A stretch of 64,000 nucleotides of DNA, taken from positions 124,001 to 188,000 of IMG/VR virus record IMGVR_UViG_3300049846_000628; one strand, given 5' to 3'. The stretch's first letter is position 1. Each line of letters opens with the position of its first letter. Shown here in pieces: positions 18,681 to 41,324 of the stretch. The notes beneath the pieces were generated by a model. It was not told where the DNA came from, did no database searches, and saw only the letters and a program-made list of their open reading frames with translations. The translations under genes were made by a program, and so were the position numbers.

Positions 18681-18775
18681 TCTTGTCTTAAAAGTCGCAA
18701 TAATATTTATATTAAAAGAGGGACATTTCTGTCCCCCCAACTTTGCTTTTAGATGCGACTCCTAAGCATCAATAT

Positions 18776-19756
18776 TTAGTATAGTGCCTCCACCAGCGCA
18801 TTCGACTGCTGCTGTGCCAGTTCATCAACTGTCTCCTGGGCAATGCTGATTGCGTCTGGATTCACATCCATCGTGATACAATTTCGCCCCAAACCAAAAG
18901 CGGAAATTGCTGTCGTTCCAGATCCACAGAAGGGGTCCAGCACCCATCCATCAGGAGGACAAGACGACTTTATGATACGTTCTAACAGTTTCAGAGGCTT
19001 TTGTGTAGGATATTTACGCTTATTCTGTTCACTTCTGCTGATAAAGTATACATCATCCCACAAATTCTGCACTGGGACACCTTTAGACTCGTGAGAATAG
19101 ATTTTTTTGTAAATATTGTTTGCTCCGTAGTGCAGACGACCCTGGGCGTCCAGTTCTTCCAGTTTTTCCCTTGTTATACGGAATCCATACTGAGGATTAT
19201 AACCTTTATACTCAAAACGGGCACAAGGACGACTCTTTTCACCAGTCACCTTTGCGAGAGCATAATATCCAACTTCATCTTTATTCTTGAAGCTGTTCTC
19301 AGCATACACTGGATCAAGAGATGTATATTCAACTTCAAAGTATGGTTTGCCTTTCTGCAGCACCATAATACTATCTACAATGTTACCCCAACCATTCTTG
19401 AGGTTGTTCTTTGGTCCACTACGTTTCCAAGAGATGTTAGTGTAGAAAGCATCCCTAACTTTAGGATCTACCTTAGAAAGGACTAAAGCATTACCAATAA
19501 AGTTATTGTGGGCATATAACCACCCATTCTTATTCAACTTAGCAAAACAGTTATTGATGACTTCTGCATACCAGTCAATATAGTCATCAAAGGAACTCCA
19601 ATTATCACTAAAACCTTTCTCTTGACCATCTTCCTCCTGCATTGTAAAATCCCGCTGCAATCCAAAGGGAGGGTCCATATAAATCAGATCAAATGTCTGG
19701 TCAATGGTATTGAGTTCTTCAACAGGCTTCTGAAGAATCTTAATCTCAGGCATCAC
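18776..19756 (-). CDS. N6-adenine/N4-cytosine DNA methyltransferase (beta class)
   Basis: LIYMDPPF, YPTQKPLKLLERII, VLDPFCGSGTT. Confidence 0.92.
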   Translation of the reverse strand: MMPEIKILQKPVEELNTIDQTFDLIYMDPPFGLQRDFTMQEEDGQEKGFSDNWSSFDDYIDWYAEVINNCFAKLNKNGWLYAHNNFIGNALVLSKVDPKVRDAFYTNISWKRSGPKNNLKNGWGNIVDSIMVLQKGKPYFEVEYTSLDPVYAENSFKNKDEVGYYALAKVTGEKSRPCARFEYKGYNPQYGFRITREKLEELDAQGRLHYGANNIYKKIYSHESKGVPVQNLWDDVYFISRSEQNKRKYPTQKPLKLLERIIKSSCPPDGWVLDPFCGSGTTAISAFGLGRNCITMDVNPDAISIAQETVDELAQQQSNALVEALY

Positions 19757-19776
19757 CGAAAAAATCTTATCCCGTC

Positions 19777-19813
19777 ATTCTACCATAAAAAAAGGAGGGG
19801 ATCAACCCTCCTT
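19777..19813 (-). terminator. Intrinsic terminator overlapping a sigma70 promoter
   Basis: AAGGAGGG-TTGATC-CCCTCCTT + T run; TTGATC-N17-TAGAAT inside it. Confidence 0.8.
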
Positions 19814-19817
19814 AAAA

Positions 19818-20030
19818 TCAATCATCGTAGACTCTACATTCTAACGCATCGGGGTTAGCATCACAATATAACTCAAATGCTGTTGGATCGTGGGAATCAT
19901 CAGGATGATTTGCCTTATAAGCCTTTAGTGCTTCTAATTCTTCTTCTGTATGTCTTCTTGATTGTGCAGAAATCGTAGGATCACTCAAAAGTTCTTCATC
20001 CTTCTGGATGTGTTGATCGATGTTTTCCAT
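19818..20030 (-). CDS. cp12: CP12 Calvin-cycle inhibitor
   Basis: C-terminal DPTAFELYCDANPDALECRVYDD CP12 motif; start MENIDQH. Confidence 0.92.
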   Translation of the reverse strand: MENIDQHIQKDEELLSDPTISAQSRRHTEEELEALKAYKANHPDDSHDPTAFELYCDANPDALECRVYDD

Positions 20031-20061
20031 TGTTTTGTAGCGTGATAATCTATTTATTTTC

Positions 20062-20932
20062 TCACTCACTCAGAGCAGATCCTCTCCAATTCTTTGGTGG
20101 GAGAGGATCACACTTGCCCTCAAGTGAACGAACCATTAGTTCAGTGAACTTTTCCATTTTTTCGGCAGAAACTGTCTGTGGAGCGTAGGTAATAGCATCT
20201 TTAAGAGCTACAAGTTCACTCCATTCTTCTTGTGTAAGGTTTTCAGATCCAGTTTTTGCTAGAGTCATAAGTCTTTTGCGATGTGTCCCAATGTTAGCAT
20301 TCTAATATATTACTATCTAGAAACTTAATGTTTTCTTCGGGATCACGTTACATTACTTAATAAAATCATCAAGTGCATCAAGATCATCTTTCAGTTCTTG
20401 GTGTATTTTTTCGTCTTGATAATAAGACCAGAGAGCATTGTGAACGTGAATTAGATGATCTACCCAGAAACCAGCAGGATAAATTCCAAGTGCATCTTGA
20501 AGACCACGATGACTAGTTCCTTCGCTCTCTGCCTTACACATAATATAGCAGATTGCTTGTACCATATCAAGTTTATCCTCTTCAGAAAGCATAAAATACT
20601 TTCCTACTGCACGTTGCTTTGCTTCTTCATTTTCTTTTTGCATTTCTTTGAAAGCATCAGAATCCCACCATTCTTTTAGTGCTTTACCAAGTTCGTTAGG
20701 TTTAGTCATCTTTTCCAAAGATAGTTCCAAAGAAACCAGAGTCTCCTGGTTTACGATTTTCAAGTTTATCCAGAATAGAATCAGTCGTTTGTAGAGTTTC
20801 AATACGACTGATCATATCAGCGATTACACTACAAACCATTGGACGTTCTTGACGTGCAGCATATGCTAATGCATTACGCAAAGATGCTTCTGCTTCCTTT
20901 AGACTTGTTTCAACAGATTCACTTAGCGCCAT
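20062..20932 (-). other. Three hypothetical ORFs (20062-20268, 20353-20709, 20702-20932)
   Basis: Co-oriented ORFs from the track. Confidence 0.75.
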
Positions 20933-21088
20933 TTAATCTATCCTCACATTTAGTATAAAAAGTTCCATTTACATAACAAGACTTACCTGGTTCATAGTAT
21001 TTTATCACAGGTATTTGTGTTCTTGGATATTCTACCACATTTTTTACGTGGCAGAATATATTATAACCACAAACAAGAGTTTCAATCA

Positions 21089-21865
21089 TCAACACTCATC
21101 CGATTTAAGTTCAGAATGTTGCCAACGACCATCGATCATTTTATATCCAGCAGCAAGCATTTCTTCTTTATAAGGATCTTTCCATACTTTTTTGAGTGTA
21201 TAAGATCCATTACCATTATCGACCCATTCAACTTGATCACCCTCTTTCAGATTTGCTGCTTCAAGAAGATCATCGGGGAAAGAAACAAAATATTCTGTTT
21301 CATCGGTATCAGTATCTTTCGCTTCTTCGACAGGAAGAACCCATTTCTTTACTTTATCTTCTTTTTGAGATGGAATCCAGAAGCCATCGGCAGTCATTTC
21401 CCAACCAGCAGCAACTGCTTCATCATATGTGAGGAAAGGATTTAGGCGATTAAAATCATTACGAGTATAATCGTAATAATGTTTAGAGTGCTTCGCGTCA
21501 AGTTCTGCTCGCTTATCATAGTATTCTGCTTCACGCAGGTTATACTCGCGGCATTGTTCTTTTTCTTGATCCGATGCTGCCTTGTCGCACATCGCATTCA
21601 GTTCTTCTTCAGTATATTGGACGCTACTTACCGTTGAACCCCTGAATTCATCATATACAGGAATGCGATGCTTACGATCATCATTCAGAAGAGCAAGTAA
21701 TTGATAACAACGATTTGCTTGCTCTTTGAAGTAAACATATTGTTCTTCTACTACACCCTTGATTACATCATAGATTTCTTGGGGAGTTGCCTCTGCACAA
21801 GACAAAGCATCGTGCATCCAGTTATCAAGTTGTTCAAGAGAATACTTCTTGTAGTCAAAGTCCAT
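21089..21865 (-). CDS. Protein with C-terminal AbrB/SpoVT-like domain
   Basis: EYFVSFPDDLLEAANLKEGDQVEWVDNGNGSYTLKK. Confidence 0.65.
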   Translation of the reverse strand: MDFDYKKYSLEQLDNWMHDALSCAEATPQEIYDVIKGVVEEQYVYFKEQANRCYQLLALLNDDRKHRIPVYDEFRGSTVSSVQYTEEELNAMCDKAASDQEKEQCREYNLREAEYYDKRAELDAKHSKHYYDYTRNDFNRLNPFLTYDEAVAAGWEMTADGFWIPSQKEDKVKKWVLPVEEAKDTDTDETEYFVSFPDDLLEAANLKEGDQVEWVDNGNGSYTLKKVWKDPYKEEMLAAGYKMIDGRWQHSELKSDEC

Positions 21866-22012
21866 CGGTAAAGTCCTTGATTGCTTGCTCTACTATAACC
21901 TGAATCTCTTTGGAAGTCAAGCCATTCAACCACTTCCAATTTGGGTCTTCTGGATCCCAGTCCATAGAAAAAGACCCATCTTCATTTTGTGTTATTTTAA
22001 GCGTATCTTCCA

Positions 22013-22843
22013 TCAATCTCTTGGTTTTGGTTTAGAACATTCATGACAATAATATGAAAATCCGTCACGAAAGTATTTCACAACTTCATAATGGTCTTTA
22101 TTAAGTGGTTTTTCTACACCACACTTATCACATATCCTTGTCTTTTTTGATGGACTTTCGGAGACGTTTGAGCTCTTTGAGTTCCATTTTAATATTTTTG
22201 TAAGCAGTTTCAGCATCAAACTTTCCTCCCATCTCCATTGCTATGATAACATCAACTCTTGTTCCAAAGTGTGCAAGTGCTTTTTCAAAATCATCTAAAT
22301 CATACATCGTAATTGATCCTACAACGCTCAGCAAGAATATCTATACGCGAATCCAGAGAATTTTCCATCCTATACAATTCGTTAATCAACTCTACGTTTT
22401 CTTCTTCAAGTCTTTCTACTTTTGCTTCCAACTCATAAAGTCTCTTGTAGACATCATCCATTGGAACATCATCAGAAAAAGACCATTTGCTAAACCAACT
22501 CATAATATACCAACAGATTTAAGATAATTTCGATAAGCCATATAACGTTGAATGGATGGTGTTACTCCAAGACTTTCACAGCACCTACAATATGAAATGA
22601 ATTCATACCAAGGTGCTGTTGGGTCTGTATCACTCACAATTTACCTCCTACTTGACCCTCATAAATTTTGGATTCAGGGAAACCTTCCTGCCGTCCTTTA
22701 AGAATGTAACGGGTTGCTGATATACATTGCTCTTCAGTGAGAGACGTGACCAGTCCCTTACCATCTTTGTCGGTTGAATCCCAGAGTCCATACTTTTTTT
22801 GTTCAATGTAAAAGCAGTCGTCAATTAGTTTCTTTTTTGTCAT
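22013..22843 (-). other. Small hypothetical ORFs (incl. CxxC...CxxC protein ending 22013, 22128-22334, 22300-22503, 22634-22843)
   Basis: Co-oriented ORFs from the track. Confidence 0.65.
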
Positions 22844-22948
22844 TTACTTCCTTTACAGTTTTATGAAGTTGTTTCAGTGCCTCAATGGTTTCTGGAGTTT
22901 CTTCCCAAAACCACGAATTACCATTCTTATCTACAAAAGTACGTTCAG

Positions 22949-23974
22949 TCATAGAGTAATCCAGCGTTCGTTTGAAAGAGTCCATTGAGTCACTTCTGCG
23001 ATACGCTCACGAACTGACTTTTGGGGGACCCATCCCAACTCTTTCATTTTATCACCAGATAGAGCATAACGCAAGTCATGTCCAGGGCGGGATGAGTGGA
23101 AATCCACAAGTTCATACTTGAGTTCTTGACCTTGTGCTTCTGCAATAATCTCAGCAAGTTCTAGGTTGTTGAGTTCTTCTGAACCAACAATGTTGAACTT
23201 AGGACACTTAGCGTTGCCCCAAGTAGGTTCAAACTTACCCTCATAGTTCAACAGAAATAGGACAGCAGATGAAACATCTTCGGCATGAATGTAATGGCGT
23301 GACCCAGGAATCGTACAGGTACTATCACTATGAATGGTTACAGTTTCACCGTCACGAATTTTACGAATACACATAGGAATAAACTTCTCTGGATGCTGAC
23401 GCTCACCAAAGACGTTCATCGTGTGGGTAATGTATACTGGAAGACCGTAGGTGTTCTCATAAGCAACAGAAAGTTCTTCACCACCTGCTTTAGATGCACT
23501 ATAAGGATTCGTGGAGTTATAACGGTCGTTCTCCTCATACTTGATTCCATCAGGAGCAGGACCGAATACTTCATCAGTGCTAAAGTAAACAAACCTTTCA
23601 AGATTAGTTTGAGTACGGGCAAACTCAAGAATGTTGCAGGTTCCTACTACATTATCAAGTACAAACTCCATAGGATATTCAATACTACGGTCAACGTGAG
23701 AACCAGCAGCAAGATGGAGAATGTAATCAACTTGACCGATTTCAGAACGGACAAGAGGATTAAGTTCAGCTTTGAGGTCATGATGAACAACACGAACACG
23801 CTTACGAACTTCAGGATCGAATGAGAGCATTAGATCGTGAAGTCGATTCAAATTTCCACTGTAATCAAGACGATCAAGAGTAATAACCTCCCAATCAGTT
23901 GTCTTCAAAATTTGACCAATCAGATGGTGTGCAATAAATCCAGCACCACCAGTAATCAATGCTCTCTTAGTCAT
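22949..23974 (-). CDS. rmlB: dTDP-glucose 4,6-dehydratase
   Basis: GGAGFIA, LDRLDYSG, AAGSHVDRSI, STDEVFG, PYSASK, RPGHDLRY. Confidence 0.92.
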   Translation of the reverse strand: MTKRALITGGAGFIAHHLIGQILKTTDWEVITLDRLDYSGNLNRLHDLMLSFDPEVRKRVRVVHHDLKAELNPLVRSEIGQVDYILHLAAGSHVDRSIEYPMEFVLDNVVGTCNILEFARTQTNLERFVYFSTDEVFGPAPDGIKYEENDRYNSTNPYSASKAGGEELSVAYENTYGLPVYITHTMNVFGERQHPEKFIPMCIRKIRDGETVTIHSDSTCTIPGSRHYIHAEDVSSAVLFLLNYEGKFEPTWGNAKCPKFNIVGSEELNNLELAEIIAEAQGQELKYELVDFHSSRPGHDLRYALSGDKMKELGWVPQKSVRERIAEVTQWTLSNERWITL

Positions 23975-23976
23975 AC

Positions 23977-26900
23977 TTGTAACTCAGTTGAATGTCTTTC
24001 TTTTTAAGATTGTATCGGTCAATGTGCTTTTGACGATTGTGTTCGCTATCAAAATAACACTTGCGGGTTTCTTTTCCTTCTTTGTAAACCAACTTCCAAG
24101 GAAACTGATCAAAGGGAAATTCTTCAGTGTAGTCCATCAGGTAGGTTGCTCAACACGTTGAGTATACACGATATCAAAGAGTCCGTCAAGTATCTCATTG
24201 CACTGCTGATACTCGTCACTATTCAGAATAGCCTTCTCAATCTGATATCGACGAACAGCAGTGTGAATGAGTTTGTAATGTTCAGGTGTAAAGTTCATTC
24301 CGTTCCTCCATAAATTCTTTGCCCATCTTCATAACCCACTTGATATGCTGCCTGCAACCACTTGATGATTGCTCCATAATCATTTGTTTTTGCTGCAAAA
24401 TCAAAGTCATCATAGAATCTTTCAGAGCGGAATGAGTACCCTTCCATTTCTTCAAACCAATCTTCAAATTTCATTAGTCGTAAAGATTCTGCTCGTGCTG
24501 CAATCTATCTAGGTAATGATAAATCGTCTGCTCTGAATACCGAAACTCTTCAAATCGTTGCGGATTTCCTTCTTTCATTTTGTTCAGCATATTAATCCAG
24601 TCATAGTGTTTGTTCACGACCCACCCATAATGTTCATCATTCATTTTTCATAATCAGTAATTTTCCCACAATCATACCATAAAAAAGTTCACTTACCTTA
24701 TCATCGGCATTTTTCATTTGATCTTTTGTAAGACGAATTAACTCACTAATCTCAACATCAGTAAGTTTCCATTCAGTAATGTTGTGCTCGGTTACTTTCA
24801 TCATTTCAAGTGCTTTGGTTTTTCAGTATCAAATTGATAGAACTTTACATCCTTCATATCAAGACACATACGCACAGTTTCGTGCTCTCTGTGTTCTCTA
24901 TCTGTTCCTTTATATATCCCTCTGCGTTGATAAGCACAACACCAGACATTATAGTAGATTTTAGATTTATCATTCATTGACCTATCCTCAACTTGCGTTC
25001 ATCTGAAATAATGATATTGTAAGGGTCATCATAAGGATAGATGTATTCCATATACCATCCCAAAGATAAACCTTCCCAGAACTCATCATATCCCCAAGTA
25101 TCACCATCATTATAACAATCCAGACAATTCCAGAAGTTATGGAAACCCTCAAGGAAGATTTCCCATTTTGTTGGATTATCAAATCTCACGGCGTTTCATC
25201 ACTCCAATAGTAACGCAGTTTATCACCATCGGCAGAAATATTCAAGTGATAGATTTTATCATCCTCAGTATACACACCAATCCAAAGTGTGCGTTCATTC
25301 ATACTTTCCAGGTGAAACATTTGAATGTCTTGGAGTACGATTTCGTCTGGGTTTTCAGTCCATTTTCGGGACATTAGAGTTTTCTCAATTTATAAAAGTA
25401 TCATATCAGAAAGGGCATCCAAAATCAACTGCCCTTATTCCAGTTCTCAAAGTGTCTTTATGATATTCTTTTTCTTTTAGAAGTATCTATATTTCTTTTT
25501 TGTTGGTATCGTGTAAGTGCCCCTGATGTAGTTATAAACCCAGTTTCAAGACACATCCATTTTTGAGAATTAGTTATTTTTGAACCTTGTTTTCCAGCAT
25601 TTTTTCTTATATTATAAAGTTCTTCTGTTGATAAAGCAAAAAATCCAACACCTTTTTCATAAGATGTTTTTCCTCCTATTTTTCCACCAGGAAGAAAAGA
25701 ATGTTTATGAACTACCATTTTTCCTTCAAGTTCAAGAAAATCAATCAGTATTCTATCACACTCATAAAATTCTTTGAGGTATTGTGATACTTTTACATAA
25801 TCTATGTGTTTATCAATCATTAGATTAAAGAAGCAATAATTACAAGAATAAAAAATCCCCAAGGAATATTCAAACTAATGACTTCTCCCTTGTCGTTTCT
25901 ATCCGCATATGGAACAAAAAACTTGATAATGTCTAAAGTGTTCATCGGAAACTCTTCAATACTTTACGAATAAACTGAATAGAACCATAAAACTCTTGAC
26001 CATCCTGTCCACCAATTACAATCCAATCAACTTCTTCCAGAGCAAGTTTAATTCTTTCATCTCTGGTGAGGTCTTCAAATGATTTCTTTGCGAGTTCTTG
26101 TCGTGCTGCTGCATCCATAACCTTTTCAAAGTCTTCTTCGGATACTTTTGCGGTGGTTGGTTGTTCGTCAGTCATTTTGTTCCTGGTGCAAAAGGACTGC
26201 TGCTATAAGTTTCCTTTGGTGCTTTTACATCACACCAAATATTGGGTTCATGGGGTGTAGTTTTCAAAGGAATTGGAGGAGTATAAGGAACTGCGATTGG
26301 TTGAGTAAGTGGTTGAGAGAATGAGTATTGTTTGGTCTCATAAATCCATCGTTCCAGAATGTTGCAATCCCATCCATCATAATGTTTCTTACCATATTCC
26401 ACACAATCCTCACGATTGGGGAAAGCAACAACAAAAGTGTCTTTGTAATAAAGTGCGTAGATTTTCATAATGCCTCATCAATCCACACAAAGCCCAAACA
26501 AGTTTTCATAAAGAACCTCACCAAACGATTAGGTTTATCAGGCATATAATACCTGAAATATCGTTGATTACCAATCGTATAATAACCTTTATGAGTATTT
26601 CCCTGTTTGATTACAAAAGAGGTTTCAGTATAAGGACTAGTATAAGCAGTCAATCCAGTTGTTGTATAAGCAAGTTTTAGTTCAGGTGGAAAATGTCCGT
26701 GCTCCTTTGCGTATTCAAATTTCTCAAAAATCCTATCAAACTTTCGGTTGTATCTCTCCTCGGCATGTTCTCTTGACCATTTAGAGCACATTTTGAACTT
26801 CTCTATCTGAGCACCAATCTTCTCATCAAACTCTTGTTGGATTTCATCCAGAGTTTTAGGAGGTTCTGGAATATCCAAGTATGGTTTAATTACATCAAAA

Positions 26901-31507: not shown

Positions 31508-31547
31508 TGGATTTCTCCTTGTGTGTTTGGATATTGTAGCAGAAAAC

Positions 31548-32783: not shown

Positions 32784-32923
32784 CGCGTATGAAACTATTA
32801 TAGCAGAAAACCGCCCCTGGTGCGACCCAGTGGGCGGTTCTCAAAGTGTCCTATAGAAGCTCAGACTCCCATCTTCAACCCAGACAAAGGTAGTCTAGCA
32901 GTATTATGAGTATGAGTCAAGTG

Positions 32924-34642
32924 TTACCAGAAGCTATTCCAGTTTGTACCATCATATCCCTGGTGTCTATTTAAACTTGAGTTATAAATGACTGCTCCAG
33001 CTGTAATTCCTCCTGAGGTATAAGTATCTCTTTCTGCAGTTGTCATGATTGGTGGATAGAATGCCGAAGTAGTAATAGAACTTAAATCAAGTGCATCTGT
33101 AAGAGATAACGTTGATGAAGCTATTGATACTGCAGTAACACCAGCTACATTTACAGCTCCAGATCCATTTCCAAAATTATTCGCAGTAATTGTTGAACTG
33201 ACGCTAACGTTTGTTGCCGAAACTGTAGTTGCTGAAACCGTTGTTGCTGAAACTGTAGCAGCAGTAACAATACCACTTACTCTTAGATTTCCTAAGGAAC
33301 TAATACCAACACCATTTGATCCAGAATCTGGATTAGCACCAACCTGAAGATTATAAGTTGTTGGTAAACTGCTGGTAGATACTCCTAAAGTTCCAACTAG
33401 TTGAGAATTAAGTGAAAATGCTCCAGTAACTGAGAGTGTTCCACCAATATTCAAATTACCTGAGATTGTTGAAGAACCACCAACAAATGAATTTCCAGTT
33501 ACGGTAGATGTTCCAACAACGTGAAGTGTATTAGTTGGATTTGCCTGATTGATTCCTAATTTACCATCATAAGTCAGAGTCATTAATGATGTATTTGGAT
33601 TCTGCCCATAAATCCAATTGAAGTTTCCTGTACCTACACCAGCACTTCCATATTGTAGATAAGAGTTAATATTACCATCATCATAGTTTATGATATCAAG
33701 AGATTGATCTGTACTGTAATTGTAAGATAGGTTAGCATTTCCAAATCTTATTTTACCTAATCCCTTACCAGAACTATCAGATCTAGCTACGGAAACACTT
33801 GCTTCATTACTTGTACTTCTAATATGAATTGAAGATATTCCAGACTGTCTGATTTCTACTTGAGTAACTGGATTATCTGTTCCTAATCCAATTTTTCCAT
33901 TTACATTTATATTGTTCGTAACTGTTGCAACTCCAATGGAAGCACCAGATACAGAAATAAATGCAGTCGTTGTAATTCCACTCGCAGTGGAAGCAGTTCC
34001 AGTTAGATTACCAACAAATGATCCTGCAGTAACGATACCAGATACAACAATATTTGATGGGAGTCTTGCAGTATCTAATGTTCCTGTAATGATATTGCTA
34101 GCATTTAAAGCAGTGATGTTTCCACCATCACCAACAAAAGCATTTGCTGTAACAATACCAGTAATTTTAGCGTCACCAGTTGAATTAAATCCAACACCAG
34201 AAGCAGCGTCTGGATTTCCACCAATTTGGAAATAGTAGTAAGGATAGTTTGTTGCTACTCCAACAGCACCTGCGGCATAAATGCTTGTTATTCCTATTCC
34301 AGTATTAACATCAACCCATTGTGATGTTGGAATATTAATAAGACCAGATCCATCACCATAGAAAGTCGCTACACCAACTGATGATGTAATAATACCTGAA
34401 CTAATTCTAACTGTTCCATCAGTCAGAGAGACAAATGTTCCAATTCCAGTTACAAGTAAATTAGAGATTGTAGCACTTGATGCAGTAATAAGACCAACAA
34501 CCTTTGCCGTTCCTCTAATATCTAATAGTTCAGTTGGTGAGGAAGTTCCAACACCAACCAAACCATTTGAATTTACAATAAAATTATCATCATCAACCTG
34601 AACACCATTCCTAAGATTAAATGACTTTCTATAATTTGCCAT
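32924..34642 (-). CDS. Tail fibre-like virion protein
   Basis: Gly/Thr/Ser-rich beta repeats (VGVGTSSP, LGINQANP, SGIVTA), C-terminal GAVIYNSS..QGYDGTNW. Confidence 0.75.
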   Translation of the reverse strand: MANYRKSFNLRNGVQVDDDNFIVNSNGLVGVGTSSPTELLDIRGTAKVVGLITASSATISNLLVTGIGTFVSLTDGTVRISSGIITSSVGVATFYGDGSGLINIPTSQWVDVNTGIGITSIYAAGAVGVATNYPYYYFQIGGNPDAASGVGFNSTGDAKITGIVTANAFVGDGGNITALNASNIITGTLDTARLPSNIVVSGIVTAGSFVGNLTGTASTASGITTTAFISVSGASIGVATVTNNINVNGKIGLGTDNPVTQVEIRQSGISSIHIRSTSNEASVSVARSDSSGKGLGKIRFGNANLSYNYSTDQSLDIINYDDGNINSYLQYGSAGVGTGNFNWIYGQNPNTSLMTLTYDGKLGINQANPTNTLHVVGTSTVTGNSFVGGSSTISGNLNIGGTLSVTGAFSLNSQLVGTLGVSTSSLPTTYNLQVGANPDSGSNGVGISSLGNLRVSGIVTAATVSATTVSATTVSATNVSVSSTITANNFGNGSGAVNVAGVTAVSIASSTLSLTDALDLSSITTSAFYPPIMTTAERDTYTSGGITAGAVIYNSSLNRHQGYDGTNWNSFW

Positions 34643-34678
34643 TTGTAGCTGCTTTATTTGAAGTATTTATTTTTAAAA

Positions 34679-37600
34679 TCACGCATAACGAATAATGTAT
34701 CCAAGAGCAATATATGGAGGTAGGTTTGCATCAGTTCCAGAAACTCCCTTATCGGCGGTTGTGAAGGTATGTGTATGGTTTTGACTCTCTCCACCAGTTC
34801 CTCCACCGTGAGAGTGGGATCCTGCGTCATTACTTCTACCAGCATCTGGTCCATTTCCTGTACCTTTAAGGGCATATCTATAATCATTATTGTTATTGAG
34901 TATCGCAGTTCTTAATAAGAATGGAACCCCACCATTATCAACTAAATTAGTAAATCTATTTGTATCAGATCTTTCACCACTGTTAACAACAAGGTGGTTA
35001 TGGTTTCCATCTCCACTGATTCCGTGGTTATGTCCTCTATTATTACCATCAGTTGTTCCTGTATGGTTGTGAGAGACAACTACAGCATCCTTTGTACCAC
35101 CCGTTCTAGTTACAGCTCCTGTAACAGTTGTTCCACCGTTTGCACTTGATCCAATAATGAATCTATCAGTTAGATTTGGAAGGTTGAAGGTTGTTGATCC
35201 GTTTCCAGCACCAAAAGTTGTTCCGGTGATTGCAAATAGAGCACTAAATGTAGTTCTAGAAACAGCAGATCCATTACATAGTAACCATCCAGTTGGAACA
35301 CTGGTCACATTTCCAGCCCACATTACAACAGATCCAATTGGTGCAATGCTCTGAGAGAAAATTTGACCAATTGTAGCAATTCCAGAAATTGAAGCATTAT
35401 TTGAAACACTTAGATCTGTTGTAGTAGTAACACCAGTAACAATAGCACCAGTTGATGTTGTTTCAATTTTCTTAGAATTATTATGATAGAGTTCAGAAGA
35501 TCCATCTACACTAAACTTACTTAGTATTTCTCCACCTATTGATTCTAGAGTAATAGAACCACTGGTTGTTCTCAGGGAAAGGTTTCCAACAGCGTTATCA
35601 ACAAAGCTACCAGTACCATTAGTGTAGATTGATAGATTAACACTATCACCAAAGATTATCTTATTAGTTCCTTTGATGTTTACATTATTAAAGGCATTTG
35701 TTCCACCAAAAATATTGATAGAATCTGATGCTGTGTTAGTAAATCTTACTTTTCCACTAAAAGTAGATTGTGCTTTAATTCTAAGATCTTTGTTGAAGGT
35801 TACAGGACCATCAAACTGAGAAAGAACTTGTCCAGAATCACCACCCTCAACAAGAAGTCTTTCCTTAATTGTAACCTCATCATATACTACACTGAGTCTT
35901 GAAGGATCTTCACCAGTGATGGTTGGATTTGGAATATCGTAGGAAACAGTTTCTCCACTTGCTGCAGAAGTTTTTGTATTTCCATTGAATACATCACCAT
36001 CACTATTCATAGCAGTGTAGACAACAACACCACCAGAACGTTCCTGAGATTGTGCTAGGAAGTCCTCTCTTTCGGTGAGAGTCTTGACTTGAATCTGTGG
36101 TAAACCAGTTGAATAGTTACCAGGACCATATCCAAGATATTCAAATGTGTGTCCAGAAGCACGAAGAATAGATGGTCTACGGAATTCAATAGCGACTGGA
36201 TCAATCTTACGAATTAGTGATCCACCATCGTGATTTTCTTGACGTGTACCGAGAGCACCACGAATAACGCTAATCTGAGCAGCATTATCACTGGTCGTCA
36301 CTCTCATAATCTCATTATCAATTTGGATATAAGATCCAAGAGGCAATCTGTTTGATGTAGCACCTACACCAGCAATTGCGAATGTTGACTCAGTTGTAAT
36401 TGAAGCAGAGAGTGTAAATGTTTCACTAGCATAGAATGGAACAGATCTTGTCCCGATATTCTCTCCATTTGCATCAGAAATGCCCTGGTTTGCTGATAAA
36501 CCGTGCTTCAGGATATAACCGTTTGTTGCCGAAATTGATTGGTTGGTTATCGCACTGAATGTGTTTACGCCAACTCTTTCATAGACTAAGTAATCTCCAA
36601 GATTATTATTGCTAGAATCAATGACTCTAAACTGGTTACCAGCAACCAATCCGTGAGCATCTGATGTAGTAAATGTGGAAATTCCTGTTGCTGAACCGTA
36701 AGAAGTTCCAGTAATTAAAACTGAAGGTCCGACTAAGAATCCATACTGACTGCTGAGAATCGTTGGATCTCCAGAAGTCTTAGCAACTGAAATAGTTGTT
36801 GCAGATCCAACTGAAGTGATTCTGTAATATCCGTCAGCGGTTGTTCCAGCACCAGTAAATTGAATTACATCACCAATATTTGTAGAAATACCTGCATTGT
36901 TAATTGCAATAGATGCATCTGCAGTTCCACCAATCTTAGCAGTATCAAAGTACAGAGTCTCTCCGCTTACATATCCAGAACCACCTGCTTGAATATCAAC
37001 ACCAACAACAGATCCACCAGAAACTACAACCTTAGCAGTAGCACCATCCCAGTTTACAAGTCCTGCTTCATTATAAAGTTTAACATTGTAGAACGTTCCA
37101 TTTGTATGTCCAGTTCCACCAGTCAGTGAACTATATGTTGCGATTCCTGCAAGACCGTGATTTCTTCCAAAGGTGATCGTTGCAATTCCACTGTTAGATA
37201 CAACTGAAGATATTGTAAGACCAATACCAATATTCTTCAGCATCAAGTCGGATGCTTCTCTTGTAATACTCTTCTTCAGATCGTTTGTTATAACATCACC
37301 AATTGGAGAACGCTTCGCAAAGGACTTCGCAGCTCTTGGGTTTGCGTCTACATTATCTCTATCCAGCTGAGGATAAAGATCTACAGGTGACTGACTGAAC
37401 TTAAGATTTGTAAATTCTGATGGTATTGCATTGTTTGCATCAAGAACATATAGGTGGTAAATACCATCCTGAACATTATAAACATATGGAGAAATAATCT
37501 CATTTCTATAAACATACAGGTTACCCTGCATATCATTTCTTTCAAATCTTGGTAGATCAATGTCTCTAACATTTACATCACTAGTGAATGTTCCTGGAGT

Positions 37601-40366
37601 ATGTGCAACTCCAAAAACGTCAGTTGTAGAATACTTAAATGTTACATCATCAGAAACAGAAACCTGGAATACACCATTATATCCAAGATTATTCTCACCA
37701 GTTGTATTGGTTGTACTCTTAACACTCTTAATCGCTACAAGATCTCCAGTTTGAAGATTATGTGGGAGTTCAGAAATAACGGTTACTGTATTTGAAGCTA
37801 CAGAGCAAGTGCTAATGAATCTTGGATTCTTATTGTATCCATAATCAGTGGTCGCAATGCTTACTCTTGTGAAATCAGCATTATTTCTAGCACCAGTTGA
37901 ACTTGAAGTTTGAATAATAAATCCAGTCTCAGGATCTTTTGCGTTTACAAGTTCTTTTGGAATTACAACTCTCATCTTGTAGAGTTTTTCATCCAAACTT
38001 CTTTCGTCAGAAATTCTCTTTACATAGATAAGATCTGTTGTAGTTCCATAAGTTTCTGTTCCACCAGACGCAAATGCATTATAAATTTGGTTATTTGCAT
38101 TAGTGTGAATAAACCAGTTTGATCTAACTGGATCATATTGTACTGGTGATCCAATGTCTCCAGATTCTTTATCAGATACTCTGCTTAAAATGCTAAGGCT
38201 GGTTCCACCATAGACTGTAAGAGTCTGATTGGAGATTGAGTTAGTATATGAAGTAGCAAGTTTGATTTCAGTCGCACTAGTACGAACAGCATAATAGATA
38301 CGATGTGGTTCAATATTCTCTGGATAATCTCCATCATCACTTATGAGAATAACTCTTTCTCCAGTCTGAATCTTGTGATTTCCAAGAGTAAAGACACTAG
38401 ATGTTAATGAAGATACTGTGTATGACTTAATAGCACTAATTGTTCCAATCGCTGTTGTAAATCCACTGCTTGCGATAATATTATCGCACATATAGATATC
38501 AGCTGAGAATGTGCTTCCTGCACCAACAAAATATAGTTTATCATTTAATCTAGCACCAATTCTATATCCCTGTGTTTGAGAAGAAGGAGCACTATCTGAT
38601 GCTGTAAATCCAGCTATGTATAAATGACTTGAAATACCGACAGAAGTAGTAAGACCTACATCTAAAGATAACCATTCAATATTATCTTCATTAGTAGTAT
38701 TAACTGCTCTTGGAGGAATAACAGCAGTAATGAAGGCATTATTGTCCTTATCAAATGCCGCCTTTCTAAATCCTACAGAGTTTAGAGATATCTGACCAAA
38801 GTTGGAGTTGGAGTTGGTAATAGAAGCATCTCCACCACTTTCTGCATCAAAGTGTTTTGTAAATCCAATTGCAAACACCGAAACAATCTGAATGAATGCA
38901 TCATTACTGATCTTAATATGACTTGTTTCCCATCCAGATCTATAAACTGCATCTGGATCTAAGTGATAGACTTGATTTGAGTCTGTCTGTGAAGCACCTT
39001 CCGTAAGAGTGGATCCATAAACAGGAGTGATTGGGTTTACACCCTGATAAGTTCTAGATGTCTTGTTATATTTTACAAACGCACGGTCGTCTTTTTGTAG
39101 TGAAACAGCAGTAAACTGTGCAACAACGGTACTTCTAAATCCAGATGCTTTACTACCATCGGCGTGAAGACCGTTCATACCCCAAACGGAGCGCATAGAA
39201 ATATTGAAAATGTATGGCGATGCGCCAGACACTGTATCAGTTTCAATTGTTACTGTCGCAGATGCAGCACTTGGGCTTGGATTGATATTTGGATAAGATG
39301 CTAATCCAGGCAGCAAGTAGGTAAATGATGTATCGCTAAGTACATTCTGAACCTTTGTTGAAATATTATATGGTGCTGTTACACCAGATCCACTAACTCC
39401 TCTGATCTTAATTGGAGTTCCTGCATTTAATCCGTGATTTGCTGAAGTTGTTACCGTTACAACTGCACTTGCAGTGCTTCCATTTCCAGAAATGATGGAA
39501 GAAATTGTAATAGGATCTGGAGCAAAAGCACCAACAATTTCCCATTCTGAACGTTGCTTTGCAAATCCTTCCCCATCAACAGGGAACTTCTGGTCTATAT
39601 CACGAATCGCATTATATGCGTTAGAGACCTTGCTATAGTACATATCAAGATCAGTAATTCCATAATTACCAATCTTGTTTACACCATCACAGAATTCAAA
39701 ACAAGTGAGTTTGTGGTGTGAGAATGATGGAATTGATTGATATGTAGTTCCGAAGTTATCAGGGTTTGTATAAACAAGACCATTATCATCACCATCAAAA
39801 ATTGAGAACTGCCAGAAATAGCAAGCACCAGTAATTCTGAAGATAGCAGACTTGCTAACAGAAGAATCTGTTGGATTTGGTACGTACTTTGGTCTGATTT
39901 TTGTCTTACGAAGGTCAAGACCAACAATAGAAGTTCCTCTTGGAACTACAACACCACCATAATAACTGTTAAACTTATAAAGAATATTGTCTTCTTGTGT
40001 TAGGTCAAAAACAGAATCAAGACCTAACGATAATACTGAGGATGCTAAAACACCAGCGCCGCCTGCTCTGGAAACTGCATAAGCAGATCCACCATTATCA
40101 TAGATCGCAAATCCAGGTCTATTATCAACTAAGTGCTCTCCAGGGAATAACAGAATTGTAGTTTTTTCTACTAAATCGTTATTATCACCCTTAACGTAAG
40201 AGAACCTCGCTGCTTCTATAAGAGCTCTCTGAATCGTTTTGAACGGACGGGCAAGGGAATTTCCCTGATTTGTAATTGAGTCGGTAGCATCTAGATCATT
40301 GGGATTTACATATAGAATGCGACCCTCAGTGTTCTTAATAAAATTATCTAATTTGTTTAATGGCAA
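34679..40366 (-). CDS. Large virion structural/fibre protein with tail-collar domain (TTG start)
   Basis: 1895 aa; PIGSVVMWAG..PTGWLLCNG..FNLPNL collar motif, HxH repeats, NLPPYIALGYIIR end. Confidence 0.85.
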   Translation of the reverse strand: MPLNKLDNFIKNTEGRILYVNPNDLDATDSITNQGNSLARPFKTIQRALIEAARFSYVKGDNNDLVEKTTILLFPGEHLVDNRPGFAIYDNGGSAYAVSRAGGAGVLASSVLSLGLDSVFDLTQEDNILYKFNSYYGGVVVPRGTSIVGLDLRKTKIRPKYVPNPTDSSVSKSAIFRITGACYFWQFSIFDGDDNGLVYTNPDNFGTTYQSIPSFSHHKLTCFEFCDGVNKIGNYGITDLDMYYSKVSNAYNAIRDIDQKFPVDGEGFAKQRSEWEIVGAFAPDPITISSIISGNGSTASAVVTVTTSANHGLNAGTPIKIRGVSGSGVTAPYNISTKVQNVLSDTSFTYLLPGLASYPNINPSPSAASATVTIETDTVSGASPYIFNISMRSVWGMNGLHADGSKASGFRSTVVAQFTAVSLQKDDRAFVKYNKTSRTYQGVNPITPVYGSTLTEGASQTDSNQVYHLDPDAVYRSGWETSHIKISNDAFIQIVSVFAIGFTKHFDAESGGDASITNSNSNFGQISLNSVGFRKAAFDKDNNAFITAVIPPRAVNTTNEDNIEWLSLDVGLTTSVGISSHLYIAGFTASDSAPSSQTQGYRIGARLNDKLYFVGAGSTFSADIYMCDNIIASSGFTTAIGTISAIKSYTVSSLTSSVFTLGNHKIQTGERVILISDDGDYPENIEPHRIYYAVRTSATEIKLATSYTNSISNQTLTVYGGTSLSILSRVSDKESGDIGSPVQYDPVRSNWFIHTNANNQIYNAFASGGTETYGTTTDLIYVKRISDERSLDEKLYKMRVVIPKELVNAKDPETGFIIQTSSSTGARNNADFTRVSIATTDYGYNKNPRFISTCSVASNTVTVISELPHNLQTGDLVAIKSVKSTTNTTGENNLGYNGVFQVSVSDDVTFKYSTTDVFGVAHTPGTFTSDVNVRDIDLPRFERNDMQGNLYVYRNEIISPYVYNVQDGIYHLYVLDANNAIPSEFTNLKFSQSPVDLYPQLDRDNVDANPRAAKSFAKRSPIGDVITNDLKKSITREASDLMLKNIGIGLTISSVVSNSGIATITFGRNHGLAGIATYSSLTGGTGHTNGTFYNVKLYNEAGLVNWDGATAKVVVSGGSVVGVDIQAGGSGYVSGETLYFDTAKIGGTADASIAINNAGISTNIGDVIQFTGAGTTADGYYRITSVGSATTISVAKTSGDPTILSSQYGFLVGPSVLITGTSYGSATGISTFTTSDAHGLVAGNQFRVIDSSNNNLGDYLVYERVGVNTFSAITNQSISATNGYILKHGLSANQGISDANGENIGTRSVPFYASETFTLSASITTESTFAIAGVGATSNRLPLGSYIQIDNEIMRVTTSDNAAQISVIRGALGTRQENHDGGSLIRKIDPVAIEFRRPSILRASGHTFEYLGYGPGNYSTGLPQIQVKTLTEREDFLAQSQERSGGVVVYTAMNSDGDVFNGNTKTSAASGETVSYDIPNPTITGEDPSRLSVVYDEVTIKERLLVEGGDSGQVLSQFDGPVTFNKDLRIKAQSTFSGKVRFTNTASDSINIFGGTNAFNNVNIKGTNKIIFGDSVNLSIYTNGTGSFVDNAVGNLSLRTTSGSITLESIGGEILSKFSVDGSSELYHNNSKKIETTSTGAIVTGVTTTTDLSVSNNASISGIATIGQIFSQSIAPIGSVVMWAGNVTSVPTGWLLCNGSAVSRTTFSALFAITGTTFGAGNGSTTFNLPNLTDRFIIGSSANGGTTVTGAVTRTGGTKDAVVVSHNHTGTTDGNNRGHNHGISGDGNHNHLVVNSGERSDTNRFTNLVDNGGVPFLLRTAILNNNNDYRYALKGTGNGPDAGRSNDAGSHSHGGGTGGESQNHTHTFTTADKGVSGTDANLPPYIALGYIIRYA

Positions 40367-40388
40367 TTTTCCGCACCAATTACTACTT

Positions 40389-40928
40389 CTATGCTTTATT
40401 TATTATTCTTCCCAATTTATAATCTTTACCCGGACACTCTTTTGAAAACTTACATTCTACTCCATTATTCCACCATTTTTTGCCCCAAGAAGGATTCTTT
40501 TCCTTTGACATAATACCCACCATAACAGCACTCACACTCTCCCTCCATTTATCACTTGCCTTTCTTTTCTTTGCTGCTTTACTCAATGCTTTTCTATGTG
40601 CCTCACTTTTCTTTCTGCCTTTATGTGCCTCACTTAACTTCCTTTTAGTTTCCTCACTCAAAACCCTACCGGCACATCCTTCACCACCATCAGTCATATT
40701 TCTCAAAATACCTGTACCTAAATCTTTTCTACCAAGCACGGCAATCATATAAACCTCGTGCTTTCGTGCTTCTTCGTCTGTAAGGTTTTGCTTTAAGAAT
40801 ATTCTTCTATCTTCTTCTGGGGGCAGATGTATTGCGTGCAGTTTATTGTTAATTCTACCTGCCTTTCCCTTACCAATGTAGTATGGAGTTCCATCTTCAC
40901 GCAAGTAAGCGTAAGTATAATAATTCAT
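40389..40928 (-). CDS. GIY-YIG homing endonuclease with NUMOD3-like repeats
   Basis: YYTYAYLREDGTPYYIGKG; SEETKRKLSEAHKG repeats. Confidence 0.9.
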   Translation of the reverse strand: MNYYTYAYLREDGTPYYIGKGKAGRINNKLHAIHLPPEEDRRIFLKQNLTDEEARKHEVYMIAVLGRKDLGTGILRNMTDGGEGCAGRVLSEETKRKLSEAHKGRKKSEAHRKALSKAAKKRKASDKWRESVSAVMVGIMSKEKNPSWGKKWWNNGVECKFSKECPGKDYKLGRIINKA

Positions 40929-41021
40929 TCTGCTTTAATCGTGGTTATGAATATTTATATGAGAAAAGGAGCATTTCTGCTCCTACTCTTTGCTTAAACA
41001 ACCACGATTAAGCACTAATAT

Positions 41022-41324
41022 TTATGAAGTCAAATCTTCCCCATATTCAAGTTCAAAGTCATCTGGAAGATCCTCTGGATTTTCCAGTTCTATTGGAAAC
41101 AACATTGGATGTGCTTCTTCATCTATAAGGTAAAACGAAGATTTATATAAGTCTTCTGGATCAAATGTACGGTTTTTATCTGCTTCTCTACACAAATCTT
41201 GGTCATATAAATGTCCCTCTGGTAATTCATCAAATGTAAAAGGAACGTGATTGATGAAATACATTTTCACAATCATACTGCCGTCATTGTACCAACAATA
41301 TGCGTGATCGATACGATAAGACAT
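41022..41324 (-). CDS. Hypothetical protein
   Basis: Start reassigned to MSYRIDHAY behind ATAAATA; the longer start overlaps tRNA-Leu. Confidence 0.8.
   Translation of the reverse strand: MSYRIDHAYCWYNDGSMIVKMYFINHVPFTFDELPEGHLYDQDLCREADKNRTFDPEDLYKSSFYLIDEEAHPMLFPIELENPEDLPDDFELEYGEDLTS

What the first reader, a model, noticed from the sequence alone, without database searches (positions are those of the whole stretch)
18681..41024. Covarying lock-and-key RNA module upstream of two GIY-YIG endonucleases
Seen: 18681-18778 and 40929-41024 share one layout on the sense strand: TAAATATT, a GCUUA...AAGC hairpin, AAAG, a GAAA-loop terminator-like hairpin (GGGACA/UGUCCC vs AGGAGCA/UGCUCCU), TATAAATA, a short leader, AGAAUG. 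The first hairpin carries an element-specific sequence complementary to the leader: CUUAGGAGUCGCA with UGCGACUUUUAAG (two G-U pairs, valid only on the sense RNA) and UUAAUCGUGGUU with AACCACGAUUAA. Sequences differ but pairing is kept. Known: T4 I-TevI-type genes use a simple RBS-sequestering hairpin around a late promoter. Inference: a more elaborate system, either a two-state attenuator or a separately terminated about 55-nt antisense RNA giving each toxic nuclease its own orthogonal repressor.
Basis: partly seen in the sequence, partly recalled or inferred. Interest (0 to 1): 0.85.

Follow-up and report, generated by a model that had tools for sequence, protein, structure and literature searches.

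The report
Lock-and-key RNA insulator of phage nuclease genes
Two mobile nuclease genes in this T4-like cyanophage each carry a conserved upstream RNA module (small hairpin, terminator, own late promoter, complementary leader) that most likely keeps the nuclease untranslated on any transcript entering from upstream, an elaborated form of the known phage T4 I-TevI/mobE control that turns out to be widespread in cyanophages.

Summary
It is far beyond chance: fold z-scores are -4.4 and -4.8, and 0-1 of 3000 shuffled leaders pair as well.

The same module precedes more than 100 distinct nuclease genes of several families in cyanophage contigs and cultured phages. The layout is: N[A/C]TAAATA box, 5 nt, small hairpin, intrinsic terminator, TATAAATA, then a leader complementary to the hairpin's 5' side and loop, ending 0-6 nt before AUG. 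Keys differ widely, yet pairing is kept (98.5% paired against 71% shuffled; cognate -22.4 against non-cognate -11.8 kcal/mol).

Best reading: a cis insulator of the T4 I-TevI/segB/mobE type. Incoming transcripts terminate or, on read-through, lock the start site. Transcripts from the internal late promoter lack the lock.

New elements are the embedded terminator, the conserved 5' hairpin and the invariant upstream late-promoter-type box.

A 52-54 nt terminated RNA is plausible, and pairing in trans is favourable (about -13 kcal/mol). However, co-resident modules are no more orthogonal than random pairs, and simpler variants lack the upstream box. A transcription attenuator is not supported.

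Verdict: a new variant of a known kind.

The parts
18773..18780 (-). Element A, box P1 (ACTAAATA). Its TAA is the stop codon of the upstream DNA methylase gene (18776-19756). Late-promoter-type motif at the left border of the cassette.
   Evidence: TAAATA is invariant in 48/48 aligned modules. The same N[A/C]TAAATA form lies 14-42 nt (mostly 20-27) before the ATG of this phage's own genes. The HEG-less relative L206 reads TATACTAA then unrelated sequence, so the ATA came with the cassette.
18745..18767 (-). Element A, 5' hairpin carrying the lock. Its 5' side and loop (with U 18768 and A 18753) pair with the leader.
18714..18738 (-). Element A, intrinsic-terminator-like hairpin (9 pairs, GAAA loop) plus U tract.
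   Evidence: The stem covaries across modules.
18704..18711 (-). Element A, P2: perfect T4-type late promoter TATAAATA.
   Evidence: Invariant in the aligned modules.
18681..18703 (-). Element A leader. The key at 18684-18699 pairs with the lock. The leader is unstructured when the 5' arm is absent.
   Evidence: (0 kcal/mol alone).
18081..18680 (-). HEG-A, a 199-aa divergent GIY-YIG-type homing endonuclease. The true start is ATG 18680. The TTG at 18740 in the ORF list is a mechanical artefact that runs through the terminator.
41019..41026 (-). Element B, box P1 (CATAAATA). It overlaps the stop codon of the upstream phrog_4134 gene and is identical to the native late promoter of HEG-less relatives.
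40992..41013 (-). Element B, 5' hairpin carrying the lock.
40960..40984 (-). Element B, terminator-like hairpin (7 pairs, GAAA loop) plus U-rich tract.
40952..40959 (-). Element B, P2: TATAAATA late promoter.
40929..40951 (-). Element B leader. The key lies at about 40930-40949.
40389..40928 (-). HEG-B, a 179-aa GIY-YIG-type homing endonuclease with a NUMOD3 motif.
40397..40404 (-). Third late-promoter box (AATAAATA), inside the 3' end of HEG-B. With the native leader that follows, it restores expression of the 1895-aa structural gene (34679-40366).
   Evidence: Across cassettes, [AC]TAAATA lies within 60 nt of the nuclease stop (mostly -12 to +13) in 22%, against 1.3% background.
61003..61060 (-). 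Simple (I-TevI-like) version of the same lock. A 15-pair helix encloses TATAAATA (61034-61041) and ends 1 nt before the AUG of an HNH/endonuclease VII-like gene (60406-61005) downstream of thyX. There is no terminator.
   Evidence: z -4.28.
57851..57939 (-). Class-2 version. The lock (GGGUAGGGGUA) sits in the apical loop of a long terminator-type stem. It is followed by TATAAATA (57876-57883) and the key UACCCCUAC, before the 101-aa ORF 57548-57853.
   Evidence: The same design precedes GIY-YIG-type genes in L035, L038, L045 and phage S-SRM01.

Best explanation
Each element is the 5' control region of a mobile, free-standing homing-endonuclease cassette in a T4-like cyanophage. It most likely acts in cis as a transcription and translation insulator.

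How it works:
1. RNA polymerase arrives from the upstream gene, from the native promoter the cassette landed behind, or from box P1.
2. It first transcribes the lock, pre-folded as a small hairpin, and then meets an intrinsic terminator.
3. Transcripts that read through also contain the leader. The leader pairs with the lock over 13-20 bp (about -22 kcal/mol) and buries the whole translation initiation region up to 0-6 nt before the AUG. No nuclease is made from these transcripts.
4. Transcripts that start at the cassette's own late promoter (TATAAATA, inside the loop of the long helix) lack the lock. Their leader is unstructured, and they are the only translatable mRNA.

The nuclease is therefore made only late and only from its own promoter. 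The cassette's 3' end carries a promoter copy for the displaced downstream gene.

Shown: the anatomy, its conservation and covariation, and the empty-site comparison. Inferred: promoter activity, termination, and the block of translation.
For: Structure:
- The long-range helix encloses the terminator and P2, while late-type leaders alone are unfolded.
- In 48 distinct modules the helix has 13-20 pairs and -22.4 +/- 1.5 kcal/mol. It starts 3-5 nt after TATAAATA and ends 0-6 nt before AUG, or covers it.

Covariation:
- 11 of 13 consensus pairs show compensatory changes.
- On 66 further distinct sequences, 98.5% of cells are paired against 71% shuffled. There are 219 double-change cells against 62, with 0 of 500 shuffles reaching either. 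Slid registers pair at 49% or less.
- Non-cognate pairing (-11.8) equals shuffled pairing (-11.0).

Simpler versions of the same lock:
- Some lack a terminator: window 61003-61060, L042, L055.
- Others carry the lock in the terminator loop: window 57851-57939, S-SRM01.
- The cis helix around the late promoter is the common core.

Spread: the module precedes several unrelated nuclease families, namely Pfam GIY-YIG, NUMOD3 and HNH-like.

Empty sites: a native promoter fires straight into the cassette at both window sites.

Literature:
- I-TevI/II/III, segB and Aeh1 mobE use an RBS-sequestering hairpin with an internal late promoter (PMC2988022).
- Marine metagenomic endonuclease genes have TATAAATA-containing hairpins built from two complementary motifs (PMC2677866).
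- The cyanophage late-promoter consensus is NATAAATA (PMC2984593).
Against: - There is no RNA or expression data. Promoter use, termination efficiency and translational block are all inferred.
- If the terminators are efficient, little read-through RNA exists to be locked.
- A pure cis model does not obviously need the 5' hairpin, which is conserved in 96 of 96 segments.
- It also does not obviously need the invariant upstream TAAATA box at a fixed 5-nt distance.
- If P1 is itself a late promoter, timing alone cannot be the purpose.
- The leaders have only weak Shine-Dalgarno-like sequences, so 'RBS sequestration' here means burying an A/U-rich leader.
Confidence: 0.7

Rival explanations
1. 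Trans-acting small RNA, possibly in addition to the cis lock. Box P1, or the native promoter at the border, drives a 52-54 nt RNA made of the lock hairpin plus the terminator hairpin. Its loop nucleates pairing with the 5' end of the cognate late mRNA, and pairing spreads down one side of the stem. This limits nuclease translation, in an IS10 RNA-OUT/RNA-IN-like topology but encoded on the same strand.
For: - P1 is invariant in 48/48 modules, and in all but one of 66 further rows, while almost everything else varies.
- It has the same N[A/C]TAAATA form as this phage's own candidate late promoters and as P2 of phages S-B68 and B23.
- Its TAA is the upstream stop codon in only 23 of 49 modules.
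- The P1 spacer does not covary with the AUG context, so its conservation is not explained by RNA pairing.
- The spacing puts a T4-type start at the base of the hairpin.
- The two-hairpin fold is present in 96 of 96 segments (z -2.3) with the key core in the loop.
- Cofolding gives -13.4 and -12.9 kcal/mol for cognate pairs against -3.5 and -2.8 for A x B.
Against: - No RNA has been observed.
- Co-resident modules are not more orthogonal than random pairs: mean -12.3 against -12.4 kcal/mol, and 12.5% against 11% at or below -17.
- Class-2 and simple modules have no conserved upstream box.
- No stand-alone copies of the small-RNA unit were found. All 31 units detected by a strict filter are followed by a second box, and 97% by a matching leader.
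- P1 may instead be a recombination joint or a native promoter relic.
- An RNA made from a strong promoter at the same time as its target could silence the nuclease altogether.
Confidence: 0.25
2. Two-state transcription attenuator. The local hairpin and the long helix would be alternative structures that decide whether the terminator forms.
For: The local hairpin and the long helix are mutually exclusive, because they share the 5' strand.
Against: - The terminator hairpin is nested inside the long helix and is intact in both conformations.
- No segment is complementary to a terminator strand.
- The 3' arm is transcribed only after the terminator has been passed, so it cannot influence termination.
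Confidence: 0.03
3. The long helix is mainly a processing or decay signal, for example an RNase III-type double-strand cut. The cut would separate the upstream mRNA from the nuclease mRNA and destroy the leader of read-through transcripts.
For: The helix is uniform at 13-20 bp and about -22 kcal/mol. T-even endonuclease transcripts are known to be processed by RNase E (PMC2988022).
Against: The helices are short for RNase III, and nothing in the sequence points to a cleavage site. This reading is compatible with, and not distinguishable from, the cis lock using these tools.
Confidence: 0.1
4. Non-functional by-product. The complementarity would be a relic of how the cassette was built, such as an inverted duplication, with no present role.
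For: None beyond parsimony.
Against: Dozens of different keys occur with compensatory changes, including single-position A-U, C-G and U-A swaps among close relatives. Helix energy is tightly conserved.
Confidence: 0.02

Closest known systems
T4-type translational control of homing endonucleases (I-TevI, I-TevII, I-TevIII, segB; Aeh1 mobE) and of T4 late genes e and soc
   Same: A late promoter TATAAATA sits inside an RNA helix whose 3' strand covers the translation initiation region. Transcripts from upstream are silent, and late transcripts lack the 5' strand. Layered control is also described for mobE: a terminator (internal to the T4 mobE coding region) and an RBS-sequestering hairpin (Aeh1 mobE) (PMC2988022).
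   Different: - The helix is long-range, with arms about 60 nt apart, and encloses a complete intrinsic terminator.
- The 5' strand is pre-folded in its own conserved hairpin.
- A second late-promoter-type box is fixed 5 nt upstream of that hairpin.
- The whole unit is portable and shared by several nuclease families in more than 100 covarying versions.
Hairpins upstream of endonuclease genes in 'fractured gene' loci of marine metagenomes (Dassa et al. 2009, PMC2677866)
   Same: They are probably the same or a sister element. The hairpins lie upstream of free-standing GIY-YIG and Vsr-like endonuclease ORFs, many contain TATAAATA, and two conserved motifs complement each other.
   Different: That paper describes a hairpin and two motifs in 15 loci. 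It does not mention a terminator (0 occurrences of the word), an upstream box, an alternative 5' hairpin, key diversity or covariation statistics.
IS10 RNA-OUT/RNA-IN and phage P1/P7 c4-ant antisense control (own knowledge; c4 reference listed in PMC12197685)
   Same: This applies to the trans reading only. The loop of a short stable hairpin RNA pairs with the 5' end and start region of a mobile-element mRNA. In P1/P7 the regulator is encoded on the same strand as its target, and specificity differs by matched changes on both partners.
   Different: - No small RNA has been shown here.
- There is no selection for orthogonality.
- IS10 RNA-OUT is encoded on the opposite strand.
- c4 is processed from a longer transcript rather than terminated.
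PeSL promoter-early stem-loop cassettes of T4-type phages (PMC2839356, PMC4122927)
   Same: Both are composite terminator-plus-promoter units that flank variable genes and are proposed to mediate modular shuffling. Here promoter boxes lie at both cassette borders.
   Different: PeSLs pair a stem-loop with an early sigma-70-type promoter and have no leader complementarity. This module uses late promoters and adds a translational lock.

Membership tests
T4-type late-promoter-in-hairpin control of homing endonucleases | The regulated gene is a free-standing or intron-borne homing endonuclease of a T4-like phage. | tested here: met
   PHROG 314 and NUMOD3 matches. hhalign gives 96.7% to a Pfam GIY-YIG-positive family. 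Presence/absence polymorphism at site B: 5 sequences with the nuclease gene against 45 without. The context is T4-like: gp59-type helicase loader, ThyX, and the only nucleotide hit is to the Kyanoviridae phage S-SRM01.
T4-type late-promoter-in-hairpin control of homing endonucleases | A T4-type late promoter (TATAAATA) lies immediately upstream of the ORF and between the two strands of the helix. | tested here: met
   Promoter activity itself was not tested.
T4-type late-promoter-in-hairpin control of homing endonucleases | An RNA helix sequesters the translation initiation region, and late transcripts lack its 5' strand. | tested here: met
   Folding, duplex energies and covariation. This is computational only.
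T4-type late-promoter-in-hairpin control of homing endonucleases | Translation is restricted to late transcripts in infected cells. | not testable with these tools
   Needs infection time courses or reporters.
Antisense small-RNA regulators of mobile-element genes (IS10 RNA-OUT, P1/P7 c4, hok/sok type) | The regulator RNA has its own promoter. | tested here: inconclusive
   P1 matches the late-promoter consensus, is invariant, and at site B is the native late promoter. No transcription data are available.
Antisense small-RNA regulators of mobile-element genes (IS10 RNA-OUT, P1/P7 c4, hok/sok type) | A discrete stable small RNA is made. | not testable with these tools
   Only a predicted terminator and a two-hairpin fold are available.
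Antisense small-RNA regulators of mobile-element genes (IS10 RNA-OUT, P1/P7 c4, hok/sok type) | The regulator is complementary to the target start region and pairing in trans is favourable. | tested here: met
   Cofolding gives -13.4 and -12.9 kcal/mol for cognate pairs and -3.5 and -2.8 for cross pairs.
Antisense small-RNA regulators of mobile-element genes (IS10 RNA-OUT, P1/P7 c4, hok/sok type) | Specificity matters: co-resident systems avoid cross-talk. | tested here: not met
   The 72 cross-energies from 36 co-resident pairs equal those of random pairs.
Transcription attenuator (terminator/antiterminator switch) | An alternative structure competes with the terminator hairpin. | tested here: not met
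   The terminator is intact with and without the long helix.
GIY-YIG homing endonucleases (protein family of the two ORFs) | The protein matches the GIY-YIG catalytic domain. | tested here: inconclusive
   - Pfam PF01541 is not reached by the window proteins.
- A profile-profile match to a PF01541-positive family gives 96.7% probability and E 4e-10, but over the Glu/Asn half and the C-terminal part.
- The top eight Foldseek hits are GIY-YIG domains, with E 0.3-1.5 and a model pLDDT of 77.
- The motifs YxY...YIGKG...R...HE...N are invariant in the family.
Rfam families | The sequence matches a curated covariance model. | tested here: not met
   No family matched at either element, at gathering thresholds or at E up to 10.

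The most novel reading that the evidence does not exclude
The module encodes a same-strand, promoter-proximal small RNA of about 52-54 nt, running from box P1 to the terminator. Its hairpin loop captures the 5' end of the cognate nuclease's late mRNA and throttles its translation in trans. This would be a built-in dosage limiter carried by selfish nuclease cassettes, present in hundreds of versions across cyanophages. It would also be a natural library of matched RNA lock/key pairs of nearly constant strength.
Probability: 0.25. Interest if true: 0.8.

Novelty: new variant of a known kind. Interest (0 to 1): 0.5.

Why it matters
1. It gives a general, sequence-recognisable rule for how selfish nuclease genes are insulated when they land behind a promoter in cyanophage genomes. 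The rule is: terminate, lock, restart from an own late promoter, and hand a promoter copy to the displaced gene. This helps annotate cassette borders, true start codons and late promoters in a very abundant virus group.

2. With more than 100 independent key variants and tight conservation of helix energy, it is one of the best natural covariation data sets for a phage regulatory RNA, and it is absent from Rfam.

3. The conserved 5' hairpin and upstream box are not needed by the textbook model. They make a concrete, cheap experiment possible in cultured phages (S-B68, B23/B3, S-SRM01): does a lytic cyanophage make a dedicated small RNA against its own homing endonuclease?

4. The matched pairs, about -22 kcal/mol cognate against about -12 non-cognate, could serve as parts for RNA-based gene control.

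Tried and rejected
- **Selected orthogonality.** Cross-pairing among modules on one contig was compared with random pairs. There was no difference, so 'own orthogonal repressor' is not supported as a selected trait. A and B in this window are nonetheless orthogonal in fact (-9 against -21/-22 kcal/mol).
- **P1 conserved by RNA pairing.** I tested whether P1 and its spacer pair with the AUG context. Only 7 of 47 paired, against 11 expected. Rejected.
- **P1 conserved only as a stop codon.** Its TAA is the upstream stop in only 23 of 49 modules. Rejected as the sole reason.
- **Stand-alone small-RNA units.** None was found, but the filter was strict, with only 31 units detected.
- **Attenuator.** Rejected, because the terminator is unaffected by either conformation.
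- **Rfam.** Nothing matched.
- **Column-wise covariation of the 5' hairpin.** On MAFFT alignments the 3' half of the stem is out of register, and RNAalifold saw only the terminator. It was replaced by a per-sequence analysis, which is weaker than a column test.
- **Other strong upstream/leader duplexes in the window** (ORF starts 7278+, 29759-, 6488-, 9495-). Inspection showed GC-rich or unrelated folds without a late promoter.
- **Third GIY-YIG-type gene (52877-53536).** It has TATAAATA but no terminator, and only a weak A/U helix with z -0.9.
- **Gibb & Edgell 2007 (PMC1913452).** Not held in the library, so the review was used instead.
- **Megablast of the A region against cultured phages.** No match.
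Full report
**What is there**

Both genes are on the minus strand. Read 5' to 3' on that strand, the two elements have the same layout:
- the stop codon of the upstream gene, inside a box N[A/C]TAAATA (A: ACTAAATA 18780-18773; B: CATAAATA 41026-41019);
- a 5-nt spacer;
- a small hairpin (A 18767-18745; B 41013-40992);
- a G+C-rich hairpin with a GAAA loop and a U tract (A 18738-18714; B 40984-40960);
- a perfect T4-type late promoter TATAAATA (A 18711-18704; B 40959-40952);
- a 23-nt leader, then the AUG (18680; 40928).

A simple terminator scan finds both G+C hairpins on the minus strand.

RNAfold of the read-through RNA pairs the 5' side and loop of the small hairpin with nearly the whole leader. 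This gives 15 pairs in A and 16-17 in B, enclosing the terminator and the late promoter. The z-scores are -4.43 and -4.76. The leader alone is unfolded (0 and -0.6 kcal/mol). Shuffled leaders pair as well in 1 of 3000 (A) and 0 of 3000 (B) trials.

**The genes**

The ORFs 18081-18680 and 40389-40928 are paralogues with 54% identity over 131 aligned residues. A third paralogue lies at 52877-53536.

Evidence on their family:
- They match PHROG 314 'homing endonuclease', and B has a NUMOD3 motif.
- Pfam GIY-YIG is not reached.
- A profile of 27 relatives aligns with 96.7% probability to a family that does pass Pfam GIY-YIG.
- An AlphaFold model (pLDDT 77) has UvrC GIY-YIG domains as its best but weak structural matches.

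I accept them as divergent GIY-YIG-type homing endonucleases. The window is a T4-like cyanophage. Its only nucleotide hit among cultured phages is Synechococcus phage S-SRM01, a member of the Kyanoviridae. Identical protein matches (100%) lie on a 211-kb viral contig.

**It is a family, not a pair**

Relatives of the nuclease in viral contigs carry the same module in about 50 of 80 loci. In an alignment of 48 distinct modules, the only invariant blocks are TAAATA of the upstream box and TATAAATA. The keys differ widely (aaccacga, tgcgac, accacaaac, tgcggttag, gtcagtcaac, tgccgtc and others), and the 5' arm follows them, often through G-U pairs.

Covariation and pairing energies:
- RNAalifold finds compensatory changes in 11 of 13 consensus pairs.
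- A covariance model built from this alignment finds only these two copies in the window, at 89 and 80 bits, plus a weak class-2 hit.
- The model finds 70 more copies in 100 loci that were fetched by an unrelated 16-nt pattern.
- On those, 98.5% of cells are paired against 71% in shuffles, and 219 cells changed on both sides against 62. No shuffle of 500 reached either value. Slid registers pair at 49% or less.
- Cognate arm/leader duplexes are -22.4 +/- 1.5 kcal/mol with 13-20 pairs. They start 3-5 nt after TATAAATA and end 0-6 nt before the AUG, or cover it.
- Non-cognate duplexes (-11.8) equal shuffled ones (-11.0).

The same module precedes unrelated nuclease families: Pfam GIY-YIG, NUMOD3-containing and HNH-like. 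It also occurs in cultured phages. S-B68 has it between the DNA polymerase and uvsX genes, with GCTAAATA as the second promoter. B23 has it with the same key as element B.

**Variants**

Two simpler designs coexist with this one:
- A plain I-TevI-like hairpin around TATAAATA, seen in the window at 61003-61060 before an HNH/endonuclease VII-like gene, and in L042 and L055.
- A 'class 2' design in which the lock sits in the apical loop of a long terminator stem, seen in the window at 57851-57939, in L035, L038, L045 and in S-SRM01.

What all three share is a helix between a sequence upstream of the late promoter and the leader.

**Empty sites**

At site B, 45 distinct relatives without the nuclease read 'stop-TAAATAAA..ATAG..ATG'. 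This is a native late promoter that overlaps the stop of the upstream gene and drives the large structural gene. In copies with the nuclease, the cassette follows TAAATA directly. A second copy of the promoter and native leader lies inside the 3' end of the nuclease gene, at window 40404-40366.

At site A, a relative without the nuclease (L206) has a sigma-70-type -10 box (TATACT) ending in the methylase stop codon, directly before the downstream gene. In the window the cassette starts right after that TAA, and a second copy of the promoter region lies in the 3' end of HEG-A.

So in both sites a native promoter fires straight into the lock. Over all cassettes, [AC]TAAATA lies within 60 nt of the nuclease stop codon (mostly between -12 and +13) in 22%, against 1.3% background.

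**Mechanism**

The best-supported reading is the cis mechanism known from T4 I-TevI/II/III, segB and Aeh1 mobE. In it, upstream-initiated transcripts are translationally silent because a helix covers the start region, and a late promoter inside the structure yields an open mRNA (PMC2988022). Dassa et al. saw TATAAATA-containing hairpins with two complementary motifs upstream of endonuclease genes in marine metagenomes (PMC2677866), probably the same element.

This module adds three things:
- a complete terminator inside the loop;
- a conserved local hairpin that presents the key core in its loop, present in the minimum-energy fold of 96 of 96 distinct segments (-6.4 +/- 1.3 kcal/mol, z -2.3);
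- an invariant upstream late-promoter-type box at a fixed 5-nt distance.

**Cis only, or also trans?**

For a small RNA:
- The upstream box has the same form as the candidate late promoters of this phage's own genes and as the cyanophage consensus NATAAATA (PMC2984593).
- Its TAA is the upstream stop in only 23 of 49 modules.
- Its spacer does not covary with the AUG context.
- A T4-type start would fall at the base of the hairpin, giving a 54-nt (A) or 52-nt (B) two-hairpin RNA.
- Cofolding with the late mRNA gains 13.4 and 12.9 kcal/mol, against 3.5 and 2.8 for the A x B crosses.

Against a trans role:
- No RNA data exist.
- Modules on the same contig cross-pair as much as random pairs.
- Class-2 and simple variants lack the box.
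- No stand-alone units were found.
- The box could be a recombination joint or a retained native promoter.

I put the existence of the short RNA at about 0.6 and a regulatory trans role at about 0.25. A terminator/antiterminator switch is not supported, because the terminator is intact in both conformations.

**Comparison and novelty**

The module works like, and passes the testable membership features of, the T4 late-promoter-in-hairpin control. It is not in Rfam, and a 2025 review of phage small RNAs does not list it (PMC12197685). The composite architecture, its portability across nuclease families and its scale are new. The principle is not. Verdict: a new variant of a known kind, of moderate interest. 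A clear experiment in cultured cyanophages would decide the more novel reading.

Noticed in passing
window 6001-10000: A GC-rich island: 59% and 51% GC in the two 2-kb bins, against about 37% elsewhere. ORF calls there are dense on both strands.
   Followed up: no
window 17640-18068 (-): The gene downstream of HEG-A (phrog_1987 family) has ATC where more than 40 relatives have the ATG start (..IIATRGR against ..MATRSR). The same ATC or ATA occurs in L166, L198 and L208, at least two of which (L198, L208) show a nuclease-like 3' end upstream. This may be a non-canonical start or reliance on coupling.
   Followed up: partly
window 18776-18815 and 18081-18140 (-); L163-L240: A conserved near-palindromic box (GTGGCAGTT..GAAACTGGCACA) lies about 34 nt upstream of a TATAAT-like -10. 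It precedes the phrog_1987 gene in many relatives and is present at both flanks of HEG-A. It is probably an early-type promoter or operator.
   Followed up: partly
window 41358-41439 and 41483-41555 (-): Two tRNA genes lie just upstream of the phrog_4134 gene. The mechanical ORF 41022-41396 overlaps the first, so the real start is probably ATG 41321, 20 nt after an AATAAATA box.
   Followed up: partly
window 41664-41837 (-): A 57-aa Phd/YefM antitoxin-like ORF (just under the Pfam cutoff) with TATAAATA only 6 nt before its ATG. No toxin partner was looked for.
   Followed up: no
window 52408-53536 (+): A TnsA-like endonuclease N-terminal domain ORF (52408-52842) lies directly upstream of the third GIY-YIG-type gene (52877-53536). 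That gene has TATAAATA (52844) but no terminator and no convincing lock.
   Followed up: partly
window 57548-57853 (-); L164, L208, L237, L312, L356: The 101-aa ORF behind the class-2 module begins like a small family (MNKLxVQxLNEC.., 128-161 aa) that also sits behind class-1 modules in other phages. It has no Pfam or PHROG match and may be another cassette cargo.
   Followed up: partly
L253 (IMGVR_UViG_3300007735_000887): Seven class-1 modules lie within 14 kb, in front of different nuclease families.
   Followed up: partly
L367 (Ralstonia phage RSP15): A nuclease homologue in a non-cyanophage (Ackermannviridae) has a terminator enclosed by a possible 9-bp helix (GAGATATCTC / GGAGATGTCT) that covers its Shine-Dalgarno sequence. 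This could be the same logic outside cyanophages, or chance.
   Followed up: no
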